Source of the DNA: Pecten maximus
Taxonomy: Eukaryota
Assembly (NCBI RefSeq): GCF_902652985.1
Contig: NC_047022.1
Location: forward strand, 40,734,001-40,798,000
Direction: 5' to 3'
DNA: 64,000 nucleotides
This document shows, in pieces, positions 19,270 through 41,100 of the stretch; within the stretch, counting starts at the first letter, position 1, and each line of letters begins with the position of its first letter. A program made the position numbers and the translations under genes. The notes under the pieces are model-generated. The model was not told where the DNA came from and did no database searches. It saw nothing but the letters and a program-made list of their open reading frames with translations.

Positions 19270-19645
19270 ACCTATACTACAACCCATGGTATACAAACTT
19301 ACCTACGATAACCCATGGTATACAAACTTACCTACGATAACCCATGGTATACAAACTTACCTACGATAACCCATGGTATACAAACTTACCTACGATAACC
19401 CATGGTATACAAACTTACCTACGATAACCCATGGTATACAAACTTACCTACGATAACCCATGGTATACAAACTTATACCTACCATAACCCATGGTATACA
19501 AACTTATCTACGACAAAGCATGGTATACAAACTTACCTACCATAACGTATGGTATACAAACTTACCTACCATAACCCATGGTATACAAACTTATCTATGA
19601 CAAAGCATGGTATACAAACTTACCTACCATAACGCATGGTATACG
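19270..19645. repeat. 29-bp minisatellite (CATGGTATACAAACTTACCTACGATAACC), ~13 copies
   Basis: Direct tandem repetition. Confidence 0.92.
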
Positions 19646-21059: not shown

Positions 21060-24000
21060 CGCGTTGTATGTAAGTTAGTGTGTTTCACGGTGTGTTTTTC
21101 CCAGCCATTTGTTTATAGATTCTTCATATATGAATAAGTCCTTATTTTGATAAATGTCTCCTCTCGTTTTTTGTTACTCAACAGAACCATGTTGCTTTAC
21201 GTGACTGTGATTATACGACTCCTGGTCTTTTTTTTACATGTCATCTTTCAAATTTATATGTACATATTATGACTTCCTTTTTTGCTTACTTAAGATGTCC
21301 TTACTTTTAGAATTCATATATCTAACCTTTTGCTGGACTGCAAGTTTGTCTGAATGTAAACCCAATCGCCTAACAAACTACTCGCGTTTCTGTTTTGATA
21401 ATGGGTAACGATTATATGAGCCATAGAATGGCGATTGGTGTTTTCTATTCCAAGGCTTACAGTTATTGTTTGATTAAGTCGAACTTTATTTTTCTTCTAA
21501 AAATCAGTGAAATTTTAAAAATGAATCATTATATTATTCACTATTTACATTGTATAGTTACCAATATTTTTTCTTGTTTCCATAATTTGGATTTTTCGCT
21601 AGTACAGTGTGTACTTGTATTATTGATTCTACAATGTATGGATGTTAAGCCAAATCCTGGTCCGAGCCTTGACGAGCTTTCACTTTTTCACTTGAATATT
21701 AGAAGCGTTCGAAATAAATTAGAATATGTCGAAGATATAATCAGTGAATATGACGTAATATGTTTAACCGAAACCCATCTTGATGACAGAATATCGTCTG
21801 ACGATTTGACAATCGAAGGTTTTGATGCCCCTTTTAGACGTGATAGAAACTACGCGGGTGGGGGGACTCTTGTTAACGTTAAACATTTATTAAATGTTAC
21901 TAGGTTACATCATCTAGAAAATCCAGAGGATGAAACAGTTTGGGTTCAGATTAATTTAAAAAATACTCAATTATTGTATGTACCGCCTACAGACCAGAAC
22001 ATTCCACTGCGATATTTTGGGAACATCTTCGCGCTTCTTTAAGTAATGCTTTTGATCTGTGTTCAAACGTAATTGTAACTGGTGACCTAAATGTAGACTT
22101 ATTAACTGTTCAACCCACTCACATTTTCTGTGACATCATTAATTCCTTCAGTCTCGTAAATGTTATAAATGAACCAACACGGTTTGGGCAGACAAGAAAT
22201 ACTCTACTAGACCCTATACTTTTATCTGATTCTCTTTCCAGTTCTATTTCTTCAACTGTTGCTATCGATAGGAATATTAGTGACCATGATGGCTGTATGA
22301 CTAGCATCAAAGTACCCGGAATTATTTCTCCGAGTTATATACGTAAAGTTTGGATATATAGAAGAGCTGACTTTTATCGTTTTAATAATCTGTTATCTGA
22401 GTATAATTGGGAAAATATGATTTTGTAGATTTAGCTTGTGATCGTTTTACCGATTTATTTTTACAATTTGCTAATCAATGTATCCCCTCTAAAGAAGTTT
22501 CCATTAGACCTAATGATAAGCCGTGGATGAATTCGGAAATAAGGAAAAATATCAGATTCCGTGATAGGTTATATAAAAAGGCCAAAACGACAAAACGCGA
22601 TCCGGATATTAGGAAATATAAAGACCAGAGAAATAAAGTTAATAACATGAAGAAAAATGCACGCTTAATTTTTTATGAAAATGTTCATGGTCTTATTGAC
22701 GAGTATTATAGTTCGGATCCTTAATCTTACTGGCGACTTGTTAAACGTCTTATGAAATCCAATATGTCAACTGAACAGATTCCAACTCTTATAGATACTG
22801 ATTCTAATTCTCTAGCCACTACAGACTCCGAAAAAGCTAATCTATTAAATAAATACTTTTGTGGCATTACCAGTCTTGATGACAGTGAACATGTATTACC
22901 ATTTTTTCCCTCTAGAACTAATAATACATTAAGTAATATAATAGTTACACAAAGTGAAGTTAAAGATGTTTTAAAAATACTGAAACTCGGCAAGGCATCT
23001 GGCCATGATGGAATCAGCCATCATATGTTGAAATATACTGTTGAGTCTGTTTGTATACCATTAACATTGTTATTTAACTTATCCTTATCAACATGTGTTT
23101 ATCCAGATGTATGGAAAACTGCAAATGTTATGCCTCTATTCAAGAAAAATGATAGGTATTCTGTAACTAATTATAGACCAATTTCTCTTTTATCAACAGT
23201 AGGAAAAGTGTTCGAGAGAGTTGTGTACAAACATATGCATAATTTTATGTTAGAGAATTCATTGTTTTATCAGTATCAGTCAGGTTTCATGCCAGGTCAT
23301 TCCACTGTTTTTCAGTTAATTGAACTATACCACAAAATCTGTTAGGCCCTCGAAGAAAAAAAGCACACGTGCATGATATTTTGCGACATTTCCAAAGCTT
23401 TTGATCGTGTATGGCATCGGGGACTTATTACTAAGTTAAAATCATATGGTTTTACTGGTGAACTTATAAAATGGCTTGAAAATTATCTTTCAAATCGTAA
23501 GCAGAAAGTCTTTATAAACAATTAATTTTCATCTCTTAGTACGATTAAAGCAGGGGTGCCTCAAGGCTCGATTCTAGGACCTCTTCTATTTCTGATATAC
23601 ATAAATGATATAGCCGATTTTCTTGAATCAGTTTCTAGACTCTTTGCAGATGATACTTCTCTTTTAGTTTCCCCCCACTCCTGTCAAGAGATAGAGCAAA
23701 TACTTAACAGAGATCTTGAAGTATTGAACACCTGGGCTAAAACATGGTTAGTTACGTTTAACCCTAATAAAACCGAAATGATTTTCATATCTAATTCAAA
23801 CGAAATTGAAGCAGACCTTGATATTGTTTTTGATGGAATTTTTGTAAATTTTACCGAGACTCATCGGCATCTTGGTGTATTAATCAGTTCATCTGCTAAA
23901 TGGGGAGATCATGTTAATTCTATATATAAGTCCGCTATGAAAAAGATCAATATGTTAAGGAAATTGAAATTCATATTAAAACGAGATGCTCTACTTAGAA

Positions 24001-24932
24001 TTTACAAAACTTTTATTTTACCTATTTTAGACTCTATAAAATTAGAATTAGTCCAACGTGAGGCAGCACGAATTATCACTGGTTTACCATCATATGTAAA
24101 TGTTTCAGCTTTATACTCAGAAACGAGCCTTGAGACACTCTCTGAGAGACGAAAACGAAGAAAATTAAGTCTATTCTACAAAATGGATAGGAACTTAACT
24201 CCACATTATCTTAATTCTCTTCTTCCTCCAAATGTCGGCGATACTAACAACTACATCTTACGAACTAACAATAATTACAGAATTCCCCACTACAGACTCT
24301 CCCTTACTACCTCCTCCTTTATACCTTCATCTCTACACATGTGGAATGACCTGGACGTAACTACTAGATCATCTCCTTCCTTGGCAACTTTAAAAAAAAG
24401 TATATCCAGGTCTGATGAAGATAAATACCCAACATTTTATAATTTTGGTGACAGAAAGACAAATATTATCCATACTAAATTACGACATAGATGCAGTGCA
24501 TTGAATTATGATTTGTTCCGTGTAAATCTCATAAATAGTCCAGATTGTAGTTGTGGAAATCGTTGCGAGAGTGCCTATCATTATTTCTTTGAATGTGAAA
24601 AGTATGTAAATTGCAGAGGCATTTTATTTGACAATTTAAGAAACTTAAATATTAATATAACATTGAATACTTTATTGTATGGTAACAATCTGTATGCCGA
24701 TAATGTAAATCTAAATATTTTCAGACATGTGCATTATTTTAAGTCCAGCAAAAGATTTTAAGATATACATTCGTACTATATATACATGTATATAATGTGT
24801 TATATTTCATTAATATTGTCTAAGCCAATAAATATTATATTGTATTTAGGAGAGGGCGTCAATAAAATAACTTGTGCCTCATCCTTTTGTTCACTTAATT
24901 GACAATAAAATATGTTTAAACTAAACTAAACT
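21060..24932 (+). mobile_element. Near full-length CR1-group LINE (APE endonuclease, RT, C-terminal Cys/His), disabled
   Basis: ATG at 21401. HLNIRS, VICLTETHL, GDLN and SDH (APE); NYRPISLLS, DISKAFD, PQGSILGP, LFADD (RT); CSCG..ESAYHYFFEC. AATAAA and (CTAAA)n tail. Frameshifts at ~21980 and ~22410, stops at 22722 and 23343. The 5' boundary is approximate. Confidence 0.93.
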
Positions 24933-32125: not shown

Positions 32126-35100
32126 TCAAAACGGTCCATCGAATGGTCCACTTCTACCTTTGACAGACGTGGTATGTCCATTCATCTGAACAGGTACATC
32201 TTCTTTAGGTCTGTTATAAAGGAGAAGGAAACGAGTTATCATTATTTCTTACTCTGTACCATGTGTCTATAAGTAATGGATAAAATGATGAGCCACAAAT
32301 AACATCCAATAACTGCATGGTACCATTAATGTTTAATGTTTAATGTTTATCAGTCAACATCGGATGGAATAAAAAGAAATGTGCAGGAAAATGTCACATC
32401 GATTATTGATACTGACAACCAACAACACAATAACTCTACATGGAAAGAGGTCCAAGGAATATGTGACACATTTACATACACATATACAACGGAAGCCTGT
32501 AGGGTTACATACACATATACAACGGAAGCCTGTCAGGTTATATACACATATACAACAGAAGCCTGTTGGTTATATACACACATACAACAGAAGCCTGTCA
32601 GGTTATATACACATATACAACAGAAGCCTGTTGGTTATATACACACATACAACGGAAGCCTGTCAGGTTATATACACACATACAACGGAAGCCTGTAGGG
32701 TTACATACACACATACAACGGAAGCCTGTAGGGTTACATACACACATACAACGGAAGCCTGTAGGATTACATACACATATACAACGGAAGCCTGTAGGGC
32801 TACATACACACATACAACGGAAGCCTGTCGGTTATATACACATATACTACGGAAGCCTGTCGGTTATATACACATATACAACGGAAGCCTGTAGGATTAC
32901 ATACACATATACAACGGAAGCCTGTAGGGCTACATACACACATACAACGGAAGCCTGTCGGTTATATACACATATACTACGGAAGCCTGTCGGTTATATA
33001 CACATATACAACGGAAGCCTGTAGGGTTACATACACACATACAACGGAAGCCTGTAGGGATTACATACACATATACAACGGAAGCCTGTAGGATTACATA
33101 CACACATACAACGGAAGCCTGTAGGGTTACATACACATATACAACGGAAGCCTGTAGGGTTACATACACATATACAACGGAAGCCTGTCGGTTATATACA
33201 CATATACAATGGAAGTCTGTAGGGTTACATACACATATACAACGGAAGCCTGTAGGGTTACATACACATATACAACGGAAGCCTGTAGGATTACATACAC
33301 ATATACAATGGAAGCCTGTAGGGTTATATACACATATACAATGGAAGCCTGTAGGGCTACATACACATATACAATGGAAGCATGTCGGGTTATATTTGGA
33401 GTAAAACAGTTTTCGGCTATATAACTCACCCAGCGAGACTAAATTTTTTCTCTCCAAACACTCGCAGCATGAAGCAGGACTCACTGACAATAAAGGTGGA
33501 TGGTATAATAACATAGTGACCTGGCTCCAATTCAAACCTCTGACTGACCTCGCGGTAGTTGATGTACACACCAGATTTACCACAGTCACGATTATAGCGG
33601 AAATGTTGGATGTTTAGCTTCACAGTGGGGTCCTGTGTCTGTTGATGAGAATCAATATAGTTTTAGTAACATTTCAAACTGATATATTTGATTATACAGA
33701 ACTCCCCACAATGTATCTTCGTTTTTCTTATATATATAGTTTTATTTGTAATACTGAAGTGTGTTGCATTTAATGCCAACAACCTATACACACATCACAT
33801 TTTTCTGAACATACATGTACGGTAACTGGTATCATTGATTCTAATGTAAGATACATTGTACATGTAAGTTGTTAACTATGCAGGGCTGTTGATCATTATT
33901 AAAAGCTTACCTTATAAATGAAGAATCCTATTTGGAGACTTTTGACCTTGACATTGCGCTTTGACCTTCGGTGTTCTTGCATTAGTGATATGACAATAGT
34001 ACACAGTCCCTCCCTCTCAGGGTCGTCCTTCTTCTCATCAAAGTCATCTGTAGCACAGGTCATAGTTCAAAGGTTAACAACTGGGGTACACACATGAAGA
34101 TAGACTTTACATAATTAGATTAGGACAAGGTTGTGTTATTGTATACAACAATATACCAGGGCTAAATTGAAATCAGAATTTAAAAAAAAAAAAAAAAATT
34201 TAACTTCACAATTTTTGTAAACTGTGTGAATTTATCAAAGGTTTGATGATAGCTACATATAGGACAAATATCTACTGTGAATTATGACATATTTACTGTC
34301 ACAAGTGTTTTACAATCATATTTACTTATTGTTTGATAAAGTCTTACAATTCTGTGACCAGTGTGAGTGTGACCTTACCTGGCTCTGTCAAGGTATGTTG
34401 AGTTGAGACCTTACCTTACAAGGTAGGTATGTAGGGTTGTGACCTTACCTGACAAGGTAAGTATGTAGAGTTGTGACCTCACCTGACAAGGTGAGTATGT
34501 AGGGTTGTGACCTTACCTGACAAGGTGAGTATGTAGGGTTGTGACCTTACCTGACAAGGTGAGTATGTATAATTGTGACCTTACCTGACAAGGTGAGTAT
34601 GTATAATTGTGACCTTACCTGACAAGGTGAGTATGTATAGTCATGACCTTACCTGACAAGGTGAGTATGTATAATTGTTACCTTACCTGACAAGGTAAAT
34701 ATGTAGAGTTGTGACCTCACCTGACAAGGTGAGTATGTATAATTCGTGACCTCACCTGACAAGGTGAGTATGTATATTCGTGACCTTACCTGACAAGGTA
34801 AGTATGTATAATTGTGACCTCACCTGACAAGGTGAGTATGTATAATTGTGACCTTACCTGACAAGGTGAGTATGTATAGTCATGACCTTACCTGACAAGG
34901 TGAGTATGTATAATTGTTACCTTACCTGACAAGGTAAGTATGTAGAGTTGTGACCTCACCTGACAAGGTGAGTATGTATAATTGTGACCTCACCTGACAA
35001 GGTGAGTATGTATATTCGTGACCTTACCTGACAAGGTGAGTATGTATATTCGTGACCTTACCTGACAAGGTGAGTATGTATAATTGTGACCTCACCTGAC

Positions 35101-38100
35101 AAGGTGAGTATGTATATTCGTGACCTTACCTGACAAGGTGAGTATGTATAATTGTGACCTTACCTGACAAGGTGAGTATGTATATTCGTGACCTTACCTG
35201 ACAAGGTGAGTATGTATAATTGTGACCTTACCTGACAAGGTAAATATGTAGAGTTGTGACCTCACCTGACAAGGTGAGTATGTATAATTGTGACCTTACC
35301 TGACAAGGTGAGTATGTATAGTCATGACCTTACCTGACAAGGTGAGTATGTATAATTGTGACCTTACCTGACAAGGTAAGTATGTATAGTCGTGACCTTA
35401 CCTGACAAGGTAAGTATGTATAGTCGTGACCTTACCTGACAAGGTAAGTATGTATAGTCATGACCTTACCTGACAAGGTGAGTATGTATATTCGTGACCT
35501 TACCTGACAAGGTAAATATGTAGAGTTGTGACCTCACCTGACAAGGTGAGTATGTATATTGTGACCTTACCTGACAAGGTGAGTATGTATATTCGTGACC
35601 TTACCTGACAAGGTGAGTATGTATATTCGTGACCTTACCTGACAAGGTGAGTATGTATAATTGTGACCTTACCTGACAAGGTGAGTATGTATAATTGTGA
35701 CCTTACCTGACAAGGTAAGTATGTATATTTGTGACCTCACCTGACAAGGTGAGTATGTATATTCGTGACCTTACCTGACAAGGTGAGTATGTATAGTCGT
35801 GACCTTACCTGGCTCTGACAGGGTGAGCACATATTGAGGGTTCATGGAGAACATGGCCAGGTCATTTCTAGATCCTCCAGCAGTCTTCCCCAGGATCCAT
35901 TCACCTTTAAGCATCTCTACATGGCCTGGAATATGTGTGATGTAAGTTCATTATGTCTTTTACAGACTAAAAATGTAATCAAGACTTAAATATCTTATTT
36001 AACAAAACATGTAATACCACTGGAACCATACCGCCACTAAACCGCACCTAATATACCACTGGTACCATACAGTCACTAAACCACACCTAATATACCACTG
36101 GTACCATACAGTTACTAAACCACACCTGTAATACCACTGGTACCATACAGTCACTAAACCACACCTGTAATACCACTGGTACCATACAGTCACTAAACCA
36201 CACCTAATATACCACTGACACCATACAGTCACTAAACCACACCTAATATACCACTGGTACCATACAGCCACAAAACCACACCTGTAATACCACTGGTACC
36301 ATACAGTCACAAAACCACACCTGTAATACCACTGGTACCATACAGTTACTAAACCATACCTGTAATACTACTGGTACCATACAGGCACTAAACCACACCT
36401 GTAATACCACTGGTACCATACAGCCACTAAACCACACCTGTAATACCACTGGCACCATACAGTCACTAAACCACACCTGTAATACCACTGGTACCATACA
36501 GTCACTAAACCACACCTGTAATACAACTGGTACCATACAGTTACTAAACCACACCTAATATACCACTGGTACCATACAGTCACTAAACCACACCTGTAAT
36601 ACCACTGGCACCATACAGTTACTAAACCACACCTAATATACCACTGGTACCATACAGTCACTAAACCACACCTGTAATACCACTGGTACCATACAGTCAC
36701 AAAACCACACCTGTAATACCACTGGTACCATACAGTTACTAAACCATACCTGTAATACAACTGGTACCATACAGCCACTAAACCACACCTGTAATACCAC
36801 TGGTACCATACAGTCACTAAACCATACCTGTAATACCACTGGTACCATACAGTCACTAAACCACACCTGTAATACCACTGGTACCATACAGTCACTAAAC
36901 CACACCTGTAATACCACTGGTACCATACAGTCACTAAACCACACCTGTAATACCACTGGTACCATACAGTCACTAAACCACACCTGTAATACCACTGGTA
37001 CCATACAGCCACTAAACCATACCTGTAATACCATTGGTACCATACAGCCACTAAACCACACCTGTAATACCACTGGTACCATACAGTCACTAAACCACAC
37101 CTGTAATACCACTGGTACCATACAGTCAATAAACTACACCTGTAATACCACTGGTACCATACAGTCACTAAACCACACCTGTTATACCACTGGTACCATA
37201 CAGTCACTAAACCACACCTGTAATACAACTGGTACCATACAGTCACTAAACCACACCTGTAATACCACTGGTACCACACAGTCACTAAACCACACCTGTA
37301 ATACCACTGGTACCATACAGTCACTAAACCACACCTGTAATACCACTGGCACCATACAGTTACTAAACCACACCTGTAATACCACTGGTACCATACAGTC
37401 ACTAAACCACACCTGTAATACCACTGGTACCATACAGTCACTAAACCACACCTGTAACACCACTGGTACCATACAGTCAACAAACCACACCTGTAATACC
37501 ACTGGTACCATACAGTCACTAAACCACACCTGTAATACCACTGGTACCATACAGTCACTAAACCACACCTGTAATACCACTGGTACCATACACTCACTAA
37601 ACCACACCTGTTATACCACTGGTACCATACAGTCACTAAACTACACCTGTAATACCACTGGTACCATACAGTCACTAAACCACACCTGTAATACCACTGG
37701 TACCATACAGTCACAAAACCACACCTGTAATACCACTGGTACTACACAGTCACTAAACCACACCTGTAATACCACTGGTACCATACAGCCACTAAACCAC
37801 ACCTGTAATACCACTGGCACCATACAGTCACTAAACCACACCTGTAATACCACTGGCACCATACAGTCACTAAACCACACCTGTAACACCACTGGTACCA
37901 TACAGTCAACAAACCACACCTGTAATACCACTGGTACCATACAGTCAACAAACCACACCTGTAATACCACTGGTACCATACAGTCACTAAACCACACCTG
38001 TAATACCACTGGTACCACACAGTCACTAAACCACACCTGTAATACCACTGGTACCATACAGTCACTAAACCACACCTAATATACCACTGGTACCATACAG

Positions 38101-41100
38101 CCACTAAACCACACCTGTAATACCACTGGTACCATACAGTCACTAAACCACACCTGTAATACCACTGGTACCATACAGTCACTAAACCACACCTGTAATA
38201 CCACTGGTACCATACAGCCACTAAACCACACCTGTAATACCACTGGTACCATACAGTCACTAAACCACACCTGTAATACCACTGGTACCATACAGTCACT
38301 TAACCACACCTGTAATACCACTGGTACCATACAGTCACTAAACCACACCTGTAATACCACTGGTACCATACAGTCACTAAACCACACCTGTAATACCACT
38401 GGTACCATACAGTCACTAAACCACACCTGTAATACCACTGGTACCATACAGTCACTAAACCACACCTGTAATACCACTGGTACCATACAGTCATAAAACC
38501 ACACCTGTAATACCACTGGTACCATACAGCCACTAAACCACACCTGTAATACCACTGGTACCATACAGTCACTAAACCACACCTGTAATACCACTGGTAC
38601 CATACAGCCACTAAACCACACCTGTAATACCACCGGTACCATACAGTCACTAAACCACACCTGTAATACCACTGGTACCATACAGTCACTAAACCACACC
38701 TGTAATACCACTGGTACCATACAGTCACTAAACCATACCTGTAATACCACTGGTACCATACAGTCACTAAACCACACCTGTAATACCACTGGTACCATAC
38801 AGTCACTAAACCACACCTGTAATACCACTGGTACCATACAGTCACTAAACCACACCTGTAATACCACTGGTACCATACAGTCACTAAACCACACCTGTAA
38901 TACCACTGGTACCATACAGTCACTTAACCACACCTGTAATACCACTGGTACCATACAGCCACAAAACCACACCTGTAATACCACTGGTACCATACAGTCA
39001 CTAAACCACACCTAATATACCACTGGTACCATACAGTCACTAAACTACACCTGTAATACCACTGGCACTATACAGCCAAAAGAACACACTGTCTTTTCTC
39101 CAACTTGCCAATCAGTGAAATTGTTACAGCTATTTCTGGGGTTCAGAAAGAGTTAATAGTGATTTATATTAAATGTTTAAATGTGAATTAGATGTAAATT
39201 AGTATTTCAAATGTTGAAATAAAAACATGACTCACATTTATCAGCAGTTCCATCTCCATCGAAGTCTGGCCCCGTTAGACATATAGTAACTTCCTGGAAG
39301 TGTTTACAGAAGTCTCTGTACGACATCCAGAACTCTCCATCATCCTTCAGTTGTAGGCCTATCTCTTTCTTTGTGGCATCATCCACCCAGTGCCAGTTAA
39401 CATCACTAAAACATCAATGGTTTTTACCTGGTAGTTCACCACGTGCACACTACAGTCCAATAACACATACCTACACAGTGTAAACATATAGTGGACATCT
39501 ATATGACAGTTATTTCAGTAAAGGACTTTCTATGGACCATACACAATACATCAAGTAAAAGTCCTGATATCTATACATACCCTATAACTTTTAATTCTAC
39601 AAAAGTATTTATGGCCAGATTTTCAAAACGGAGGTCATGGTGGTCACTTTCAATGTAGTATGGGTCCCATTTTCAGTTAAAGACCATCTATAGATCATGT
39701 ATAACTCATTAATGTTCAGAAAAGATACCATTTTGATTATGGTGGTTTACAGAAGATAGACAGCACATCATGGCATAAGACTTAAAACTTGAAACAGAAA
39801 TGATTTGATGAGAGTAATGAGGACTCCGATCTATAAATAAACCTACTTGTCACTCCAGGATCCCTTCCATTCGTTGTTGTCGGCCCATGGATTTCTGATC
39901 CGTACCAGTTTCTCCTCCCCTCTCTCATGTTTTATCTGCAAATATACAAATATATCAAATCAGTTTCTGTACAGAATTGTCATATATTTCTAACATACAT
40001 ACCTGGTAGTCATTTGAATATTGTCGTGTTGCATATTTTACTTTTCAAACAAGAACAAGGTGGAGAATATAGTAGAGTGTCCTTACCTTTCTGATGTCTG
40101 TGATAGTGTAAGGTGGACAATATAGTAGAGTGTCCTTACCTTTCTGATGTCTGTGATAGTGTAAGCGTGACCAGACACCAATCCATTTGGGTCAGCAATG
40201 GTACTTAATCTCCAATCTCCCTACAAAAAATAAAGAATGCATAAATCAAGAGTATTTTGTTCTTTTATCCAGAAAACAACATTTTGTATCAAACAAAAGT
40301 AATTTGACTTTTTTTCATTTCCTATAATTTGTGGAAGATGAACTTGCTTGTGTACATTTTGAGATACCAAATTAAAACATGAATATTCATTGATATTCTA
40401 CATCTTTTCTTTCACATATCAGCACTTTACATACACAAAGTGTAAGTCTGCTTATACTTCCACAAAGGAAGCACTCTGTGTAAGTATCTGACTTTAGGGA
40501 ACTTGCATTATTATAAGAAAAGTATAATTTTCAATTTTACTGTTGGACCATTATACCTGAAGGAAATCCTAATCAATTTTGTAATCATTATCAATCAGAG
40601 GACGCTATTTTTCAGATACCAATTTCTGTTCAATATCATAACAACTGTGTTGTTTTTAATTGCTAGCCTTGGCAGTTCTCATGATCTCCGGGCTACAGGT
40701 AAATCTAAAATAAAATTAAAATTCAAACAGATAATGAGATACATACAAGGGTAGGTACGTCTTTATAGTATTACTTTTCACAGAAAACTGACCTTCCTGG
40801 AGCAAGCAACAAAGGCCTCAGACAAGATGGCCCGGTCCACCAGTCGGTACAGGATAGGGTCTTTGTTAATGACCTCATGGCGCTCAGCCAAACCACCAGT
40901 CAGGTCCACCAGGGCGTTCATAGCCTGGCCTCCCTCTATAGCCTCATAGGAACCATGCAATCTGAGGGGATTACATAGGCAGTGTATAAAACATGCTAAA
41001 AATATTTATTACTTCTTTTCATTTCAGAATTCATTTTTAATCATATTAGTATAGCAATTCACAAACCAGCAGTAATGAGGCATCACAAGCAATAGAAATT

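What the first reader, a model, noticed from the sequence alone, without database searches (positions are those of the whole stretch)
34369..35830. A satellite made of splice sites: ~40 abutting 34-nt mini-introns with self-masked donors, grown out of calpain exon 9
Seen: on the sense (-) strand exon 9 ends ..TATGTGCTCACCCTGTCAGAGCCAG|GTAAGGTCAC. The following array unit is GTAAGGTCACAATTATACATACTCACCTTGTCAG, i.e. the exon end plus donor minus 6 nt. A fuller copy (..CAGAGCCAG|GTAAGGTCAC) closes the far end at ~34380. Each unit has a donor (CAG|GTAAGG, like the real one), a branch-like TACTCAC and a terminal CAG, so units join as AG|GT, the signature of recursive or zero-length-exon sites. ACTCACCT resembles the U1 snRNA 5' end (ACUUACCU) and can fold onto the adjacent donor across a 4-nt loop. 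The exon-matching unit has one mismatch in that stem. Two variants (about ten copies each by manual count; plus strand CTTACCT-gaca-AGGTAAG and CTCACCT-gaca-AGGTGAG) mostly make it perfect, and I saw no double variant. Using donor +34 frameshifts, and +68 hits TAA. Inference: a decoy, ratchet or poison-donor array whose copy number could tune calpain output, or a neutral expansion tolerated because the donors are hairpin-masked.
Basis: partly seen in the sequence, partly recalled or inferred. Interest (0 to 1): 0.8.

Follow-up and report, generated by a model that had tools for sequence, protein, structure and literature searches.

The report
Splice-junction minisatellite in scallop calpain
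A 34-base repeat, copied about 41 times from the end of a calpain exon plus its splice signal, fills most of the next intron in the king scallop. The assembled RNA still splices from the original site, and this kind of repeat is already known from lancelets ("mirages") and from human genes such as F7.

Summary
Window 34403-35811 holds a 34-nt tandem array (41.4 copies, 91% alike). Its first unit spans the exon 9/intron 9 boundary of a calpain gene on the minus strand, and a fuller junction copy closes the far end. Every unit carries CAG|GTRAGG, and the two hairpin-perfecting variants occur 10 times each with no double variant.

Spliced contigs from four runs (two studies) all join the first, authentic donor (35809) to exon 10 (34047). 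No assembled contig uses an array donor.

Hairpin masking does not explain that choice:
- Half of the array donors, including the very next one, are predicted to be as accessible as the authentic donor.
- The array folds no better than shuffled sequence (z = +0.57).
- A sister array on another chromosome carries mostly stem-breaking variants.

The genome is Pecten maximus. Tandem arrays cover about 29% of a 200-kb sample. The same gene has a second, two-copy junction duplication at exon 6.

This is a "mirage"-type junction-reiterating minisatellite, as in amphioxus Adh3 and globins and in human F7, IFI6, CBS, LMNB2 and PDGFA. It is most likely a tolerated by-product. The scan had already found the same kind on three other pieces of this genome. 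Minor array-donor isoforms are not excluded.

The parts
35809..35925 (-). Calpain exon 9 (start of domain III). Its last roughly 22 nt are the template for the 3' part of the repeat unit.
   Evidence: Spliced contigs in 4 runs cover 35809-35925 exactly. Pfam Calpain_III profile positions 2-33, E = 1.5e-8.
35803..35811 (-). Authentic 5' splice site CAG|GTAAGG (GT at 35808-35807). It lies in the first unit of the array.
   Evidence: Joint 35809 to 34047 skips 1761 nt with GT..AG ends on the minus strand, in all 4 runs.
34420..35808 (-). 41 head-to-tail units of 34 nt, in 16 sequence types. Each has GTRAGGTCAC, a variable middle, and ACTYACCTTGTCAG.
   Evidence: TRF; unit parsing and per-position counts; 40 pattern matches against 0 expected.
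34369..34419 (-). Degenerate far end of the array. A 36-nt copy keeps the exon-type AGAGCCAG before GTAAGGTCAC, and a last donor-like copy follows at 34378.
   Evidence: Sequence. Alignment to the authentic junction is 20/20 identical over AGAGCCAG|GTAAGGTCAC.
34048..34368 (-). Unique remainder of intron 9, with the true acceptor. The intron is 1761 nt, and about 80% of it is array.
   Evidence: Sequence; joint coordinates.
33911..34047 (-). Calpain exon 10.
   Evidence: Contig pieces 33911-34047 in 4 runs. Pfam Calpain_III profile positions 33-73, E = 3e-8, continuous with exon 9.
40057..40165 (-). Second, nascent junction duplication in the same gene. A 53-nt unit (last 23 nt of exon 6 plus the first 30 nt of the intron) is present 2.1 times. 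The donor at 40139 is reiterated at 40086.
   Evidence: TRF 98%; sequence; the two copies match 52/53. Exon 6 and exon 7 hit Peptidase_C2 positions 209-225 and 228-253.

Best explanation
This is a junction-reiterating ('mirage'-type) minisatellite in intron 9 of a Pecten maximus calpain gene.

Origin (inferred). A short tandem duplication spanned the exon 9/intron 9 boundary. One internal copy lost 6 nt (AGCCAG, between two CAG repeats). That 34-nt form then expanded to about 41 copies by slippage or unequal exchange. The oldest, exon-like copies are left at the two edges.

Effect on the gene. It has no demonstrated function. The splicing machinery uses the first donor, the one attached to the defined exon (shown here). 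The 40-odd identical pseudo-donors stay silent or rare, as shown experimentally for the human F7 IVS7 VNTR (inferred by analogy). Any product made from an array donor would carry a premature stop and probably be degraded (inferred).

Hairpin variants. The C-to-T and A-to-G variants that perfect the hairpin are most simply DNA-level events. They fit quasi-palindrome correction by template switching, followed by spread through block duplication inside the array. They need not reflect selection for RNA masking (inferred).
For: - Array anatomy and its edge copies.
- The exon end is ancestral coding sequence. Exon 9 and exon 10 abut at Calpain_III profile position 33.
- Spliced contigs of 4 runs from 2 studies join 35809 to 34047, and none starts from an array donor.
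- The array is unique to this locus in the genome.
- The genome is Pecten maximus: 918,306,378 bp in 3,983 scaffolds, with matching scaffold lengths.
- Tandem arrays of period 10 or more cover 29% of a systematic 20 x 10 kb sample and 27% of the window, or 0.22 arrays per kb with period 15-80 and at least 5 copies.
- Two more junction-spanning repeats were seen: calpain exon 6 and a BRCT-like gene on C2 with about 70 units of 33 nt.
- The unit-type string shows repeated blocks such as KLID/FLID. G at donor +3 and T in the arm are linked within units (27/7/3/3). Variants therefore spread by duplication.
- No masking advantage for the authentic donor.
- The C2 array has the same quasi-palindrome but mostly stem-breaking variants: GTAGGG 8, CCCACC 4, CTCAAC 3, against CTTACC 5.
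- Published precedents: F7, IFI6, CBS, LMNB2 and PDGFA (PMC1557585) and amphioxus mirages that do not disturb splicing (PMC3087553).
Against: - Logan contigs drop rare variants, so minor array-donor isoforms (perhaps up to 10-20%) and recursive intermediates cannot be excluded.
- The runs are only guessed to be RNA, although spliced contigs show they hold cDNA.
- No population or cross-species data were available, so neutrality, VNTR polymorphism and age are untested.
- In this array, 2 of the 3 variable stem positions are exactly the mismatch pair, each changed towards complementarity (about p = 0.03). T/G junctions are absent (Fisher p = 0.043, uncorrected for shared descent). This bias is not explained by pure drift.
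- Earlier notes of this scan claim such arrays sit at donors about ten times too often. If true, that calls for a seeding mechanism rather than chance.
Confidence: 0.8

Rival explanations
1. Poison-donor or decoy array. A regulated fraction of transcripts uses array donors or traps U1, yielding stop-containing mRNAs, so that copy number tunes calpain output.
For: There are 42 donors with an identical 9-mer, CAG|GTAAGG or GTGAGG. Every array-donor product has a premature stop. In human IFI6 and CBS the two nearest pseudo-sites are used (PMC1557585).
Against: Only the authentic junction is assembled in 4 runs. In F7, LMNB2 and PDGFA only the first site is used. Such arrays are frequent in this genome and in unrelated genes.
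Confidence: 0.07
2. Recursive or nested splicing. Internal CAG acceptors and the regenerated donors are used stepwise. Because units abut as AG|GT, every route converges on the normal exon 9-10 mRNA.
For: Each junction reads pyrimidine-rich tract-CAG|GTRAGG, the recursive-site consensus. The end product seen is the normal junction, which this route also predicts.
Against: The intron is only 1.76 kb, whereas known recursive sites sit in very long introns (general knowledge). AG|GT follows automatically from copying a consensus donor. Contigs cannot show intermediates or lariats. Human F7 units do not end in AG and are tolerated all the same.
Confidence: 0.1
3. Selected hairpin masking. RNA stem-loops formed by the U1-like CTYACCT and the next donor hide the pseudo-donors, and the variants are compensatory changes under selection.
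For: Hairpins of -8.0 (T/A) and -10.3 (C/G) kcal/mol, against -4.0 for the ancestral state. Perfected donors need 8-12.6 kcal/mol to open. Both frequent stem variants perfect the stem and no T/G junction occurs.
Against: 20 of 40 array donors, including the nearest, open as easily as the authentic one. The whole-array fold is not better than shuffles (z = +0.57). A U-G wobble would be allowed in RNA, so the missing T/G class fits a DNA mechanism better. The C2 sister array accumulates stem-breaking variants. The F7 authors found no masking structure either.
Confidence: 0.08
4. Assembly artefact: a collapsed or inflated repeat in the PacBio assembly.
For: Tandem repeats are error-prone in assemblies. 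Copy number was not checked with reads.
Against: The unit order is structured, with 16 types and distinct edge copies. Array unitigs occur in independent runs. Exon coordinates and intron ends fit spliced contigs exactly.
Confidence: 0.02

Closest known systems
Amphioxus 'mirage' minisatellites (Adh3; globin genes BflGb6 and BflGb9), as described in PMC3087553
   Same: Tandem repeats that span an exon-intron boundary and reiterate splice signals. Regular splicing is not disturbed. Edge copies escape homogenisation. Length is unstable.
   Different: A mollusc, not a cephalochordate. About 41 copies of a short 34-nt unit, against 2-6 copies of about 150 nt in the globins. Polymorphism was not tested here.
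Human F7 IVS7 37-bp VNTR (Borensztajn et al. 2006, PMC1557585)
   Same: The first monomer spans the exon/intron boundary. Identical pseudo-donors follow the authentic one. Only the most upstream site is used. The pseudo-sites are not explained by masking structure.
   Different: F7 has 5-9 copies and a weak donor (TGG|GTGGGT), and its units hold only 4 exonic nt. Here there are 41 copies, a near-consensus donor with 8 contiguous U1 pairs, about 22 exon-derived nt, and a CAG acceptor-like end in each unit. No mutational test was done here.
Human IFI6 (6-16), CBS IVS13 31-bp VNTR, LMNB2 100-bp and PDGFA 81-bp junction repeats (cited in PMC1557585)
   Same: Minisatellites that reiterate the donor 10-25 times. 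LMNB2's repeat also covers most of its intron.
   Different: In IFI6 and CBS the two nearest pseudo-sites are used constitutively.
Recursive splice sites / ratchet points of long Drosophila and vertebrate introns (general knowledge)
   Same: Juxtaposed 3' and 5' splice-site motif: pyrimidine tract-AG|GTRAGT.
   Different: Those are single, conserved sites in introns of tens of kb. Here there are 41 tandem copies in a 1.76-kb intron, produced by duplication, with no evidence of use.
Quasi-palindrome correction by template switching (Ripley-type mutations; general knowledge)
   Same: An imperfect inverted repeat (CTCACCT-loop-AGGTAAG) whose only common variants make it perfect, each by changing one arm to match the other, never both.
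   Different: Not demonstrated here. The variants are also ordinary transitions and have spread by unit duplication, so independent events are few.

Membership tests
Junction-reiterating ('mirage') minisatellite | Head-to-tail tandem array of a 10-160 nt unit | tested here: met
   TRF period 34, 41.4 copies, 91%.
Junction-reiterating ('mirage') minisatellite | The first monomer spans an authentic exon-intron boundary | tested here: met
   Joint 35809 to 34047 in spliced contigs of 4 runs. Exon 9 and exon 10 are contiguous on the Calpain_III profile.
Junction-reiterating ('mirage') minisatellite | Units contain copies of exon-end sequence plus the splice signal | tested here: met
   Exon tail against unit 12/13, with 3 of 2000 shuffles as good. 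The far-end copy is 20/20 identical over AGAGCCAG|GTAAGGTCAC.
Junction-reiterating ('mirage') minisatellite | Normal mRNA is still made from the authentic site | tested here: met
   The only assembled junction uses the first donor. Minor isoforms are not excluded.
Junction-reiterating ('mirage') minisatellite | Copy-number polymorphism (VNTR behaviour) | not tested
   Reads were laid on RNA runs, and no second individual's DNA was examined.
Recursive splice site | Juxtaposed acceptor and donor motif | tested here: met
   CTCACCTTGTCAG|GTRAGG at 40 junctions.
Recursive splice site | Splicing intermediates, lariats or sawtooth coverage showing use | not testable with these tools
   Only Logan contigs were available, and they cannot show intermediates.
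Recursive splice site | Lies in a very long intron where stepwise removal is needed | tested here: not met
   The intron is 1761 nt.
Structure-masked 5' splice site | Pseudo-donors are sequestered more strongly than the used donor | tested here: inconclusive
   True for the 20 perfected junctions (8-12.6 kcal/mol) but not for the 20 ancestral ones (about 6.1-6.8, against 5.0-6.7 for the authentic donor). Array fold z = +0.57.

The most novel reading that the evidence does not exclude
Junction minisatellites in this scallop are not random accidents. In this reading they are seeded preferentially where exon-end sequence happens to be complementary to the donor (a U1-like CTYAC motif next to GTRAG). 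The resulting DNA hairpin would promote slippage and then be 'perfected' by template switching. The arrays would be harmless because every AG|GT unit boundary lets any mis-step be respliced to the normal mRNA.

Leads:
- The calpain, C2 and C7 arrays all carry such quasi-palindromes.
- 3 of 9 periodic-CAGGTAAG arrays in the first 5.3 Mb of C1 carry CTYAC (my own post hoc count).
- Four changes in the calpain unit all improve the stem.
Probability: 0.1. Interest if true: 0.6.

Novelty: new member of a known kind. Interest (0 to 1): 0.3.

Why it matters
On its own this is one more example of a repeat class known since the 1990s, so it changes little.

Its value is as a natural test case. A near-consensus donor is repeated 42 times within 1.4 kb, each time next to an acceptor-like CAG, and yet the assembled mRNA uses only the first. 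That is an extreme version of the human F7 system that was used to argue for 5'-to-3' ordered donor choice.

Together with the other cases in this genome, it marks Pecten maximus as a place where the birth rate and the splicing cost of such repeats could be measured.

Tried and rejected
1. Genome-wide enrichment of periodic donor motifs. CAGGTAAG three times at period 26-42 gave 6540 matches against 739 for the built-in reversed control. A same-composition 8-mer gave 5331, and its reverse 7107. The apparent 9-fold excess is therefore not robust. In 66 sampled arrays GGTAAG occurs in 3 units (mean 6-mer 1.1, 95th percentile 4), which is not significant.

2. A dispersed satellite family. The unit is unique to this locus. 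The only relatives are 71-73% matches to three other minisatellites, and the shared core with its 6-nt loop occurs only at C2.

3. Hairpin masking as the selector of the first donor. Rejected for half of the donors.

4. A known RNA family in the window. None at Rfam gathering scores.

Turri et al. 1995 is not held.

Full report
**What is there.** Read on the minus (sense) strand, window 35925-35809 is an exon that ends ...CTCACCCTGTCAGAGCCAG and is followed by GTAAGGTCAC. Tandem Repeats Finder reports one array at 34403-35811: period 34, 41.4 copies, 91% matches, no indels. A 23-nt pattern across the unit boundary matches 40 times, against none in 100 shuffles. Cutting at GTRAGGT gives 41 units from 35808 to 34420, of which 38 are exactly 34 nt, in 16 sequence types. 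After them comes a degenerate 36-nt copy (34414-34379) that keeps the exon-type AGAGCCAG before one more GTAAGGTCAC at 34378. It matches the authentic junction 20/20 over that stretch. The exonic part alone matches the unit tail 12/13, and 3 of 2000 shuffles do as well.

**The gene and its splicing.**
- The exon translates to Calpain_III profile positions 2-33 (E = 1.5e-8).
- The next exon (34047-33911) covers positions 33-73, exon 11 covers 79-137, and exon 8 covers the end of Peptidase_C2.
- The exon end is thus old coding sequence, and the array is the derived copy.
- Six runs held 12-16% of the words of a 10-kb query, about the exonic share.
- Contigs of four of these runs, from two studies, were laid on 33420-35960. 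Each run has one contig that joins 35809 to 34047 (skipping 1761 nt, GT..AG on the minus strand) and 33911 to 33638.
- No contig starts from an array donor.
- Two 64-nt unitigs of array sequence at depth 4-5 are what 41 collapsed copies of pre-mRNA background would give.
- Contigs drop rare variants, so this shows the dominant product only.
- Array-donor products would be defective. Reading on from exon 9 stops at TAA at 35773-35771. The +34 donor shifts the frame, so that exon 10 reads AGA TGA.

**The hairpin.**
- CTCACCT, a 4-nt loop and AGGTAAG form a 7-bp stem with one C/A mismatch.
- The 40 internal junctions are 20 C/A, 10 C/G, 10 T/A and 0 T/G (Fisher p = 0.043, not corrected for shared descent).
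- Predicted RNA energies are -4.0 (C/A, which prefers a shifted register), -8.0 (T/A) and -10.3 (C/G) kcal/mol.
- The energy needed to open donor positions -3 to +6 is 5.0-6.7 kcal/mol for the authentic site and about 6.1-6.8 for the 20 ancestral-type array donors. It is 5.58 against 5.63 for the very next donor, and 8-12.6 only for the perfected ones.
- Exon tail plus five units folds at -40.5 kcal/mol, against -42.6 +/- 3.7 for dinucleotide shuffles (z = +0.57).
- Masking therefore cannot be what singles out the first donor.
- Of the 34 unit positions, 9 vary. In the stem these are the mismatch pair plus position 22, a C-to-T change in 3 units that weakens the stem.
- G at donor +3 and T in the arm are linked within units (27/7/3/3). 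The type string shows repeated blocks, so few independent events lie behind the 10 + 10 variants.

**Context in the genome.**
- The assembly has 918,306,378 bases in 3,983 contigs. The scaffold lengths (60,076,705; 44,824,366; 32,483,354) equal those published for Pecten maximus (PMC7191990).
- The array is unique to this locus.
- The best weak match is a 33-nt array of about 70 units on C2. It also begins at an exon end (...CTCACCTTGTTATAG before GTAAGG) in a BRCT-like gene. The Pfam support there is weak but ordered, at 0.082 and 0.0017.
- The C2 array has the same quasi-palindrome with a 6-nt loop, but mostly stem-breaking variants.
- Inside the calpain gene itself, a 53-nt unit made of the last 23 nt of exon 6 (the GHAY active-site exon) and 30 nt of intron is present 2.1 times. 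It reiterates the donor at +53.
- A systematic sample of 20 x 10 kb shows tandem arrays of period 10 or more over 29% of the DNA, against 27% in the window.
- With 0.22-0.46 arrays per kb and units of about 35-40 nt, chance alone would reiterate on the order of 1-2% of donors. This is my rough estimate.
- A test for periodic donor motifs looked 9-fold enriched against its reversed control, but vanished against another same-composition 8-mer. It is not significant in the sample either.

**What is known.**
- Borensztajn et al. [quoted passage not shown]
- For F7 they show that the identical pseudo-donors are functional, but only the most upstream one is used, and that no masking structure explains this.
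- Ebner et al. 2010 (PMC3087553) report the same structures in amphioxus globin genes. They cite the name 'mirages' from Adh3, note that splicing is not disturbed, that edge copies escape homogenisation, and link them to Rogers' duplication model of intron gain.
- I found the F7 paper before consulting the scan's notes.
- The notes show that three other windows of this genome were already read as the same kind. One of them gave me the 'mirage' lead, which I checked in the paper.
- Their claim of a tenfold excess at donors I could not test.

**Verdict.** The most likely account is a tolerated by-product of very frequent tandem duplication. The first donor is chosen by position next to the defined exon; the use of the first donor is shown here, while the reason is inferred from F7. 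The pseudo-donors stay silent or are cleared by surveillance (inferred). The variants are shaped by duplication and perhaps by quasi-palindrome correction (inferred). Decoy, ratchet or dosage roles remain possible only as minor effects that contigs cannot see.

Noticed in passing
window 40057-40165 (-): A 53-nt unit (the end of the catalytic-His exon 6 plus the first 30 nt of its intron) is duplicated 2.1 times at 98% identity. It reiterates the donor at +53. This is a nascent junction repeat in the same gene.
   Followed up: yes
L015:3049-4001 and L011:1-1890 (G000:C2:46146049-46148450): A 33-nt array of about 70 units starts at the donor of a BRCT-like exon (...CTHLVI). It shares CTCACCTTGT..AG|GTAAGGT with the calpain array. 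Its stem variants are mostly disruptive.
   Followed up: partly
window whole; L016-L035: Tandem arrays of period 10 or more cover 27% of the window and 29% of a systematic 200-kb sample. The published repeat table lists only 0.99% simple repeats and 16.7% 'unclassified' (PMC7191990). Minisatellites may be hidden in that unclassified class.
   Followed up: partly
window 35816-35836 (-) against the unit tail: The four differences between the exon 9 tail and the array consensus are all transitions. In the exon frame they are synonymous or conservative (TAT/TAC, GTG/ATA = Val/Ile, CTG/TTG). This would fit the array preserving an older state of the exon.
   Followed up: no
window 19281-19644 (-): A 29-nt array of 12.5 copies in which each unit carries TAG|GTAAGT on the calpain sense strand. 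I did not determine whether it abuts an exon.
   Followed up: no
window 36010-39075: A 39-nt array of 78.6 copies (3 kb) fills most of intron 8. It starts about 150 nt after the exon 8 donor and ends about 85 nt before the exon 9 acceptor. It is not junction-derived.
   Followed up: partly
L013:964-4201 (G000:C7:4925463-4928700): A 37-nt array of more than 87 copies with AAG|GTGAGTAC followed by its near-complement GTACTTAC. This is another donor-like quasi-palindrome, and it adjoins a 22-nt array.
   Followed up: no
G000:C1:0.74-5.27 Mb (one search list): At least 9 distinct arrays carry CAGGTAAG in every unit within the first 5.3 Mb of C1. Three of them also carry CTYAC, the donor's complement.
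   Followed up: no
window 21395-24761 (+): Long ORFs with endonuclease-like and reverse-transcriptase-like sequence, by eye a non-LTR retrotransposon, downstream of the calpain exons.
   Followed up: no
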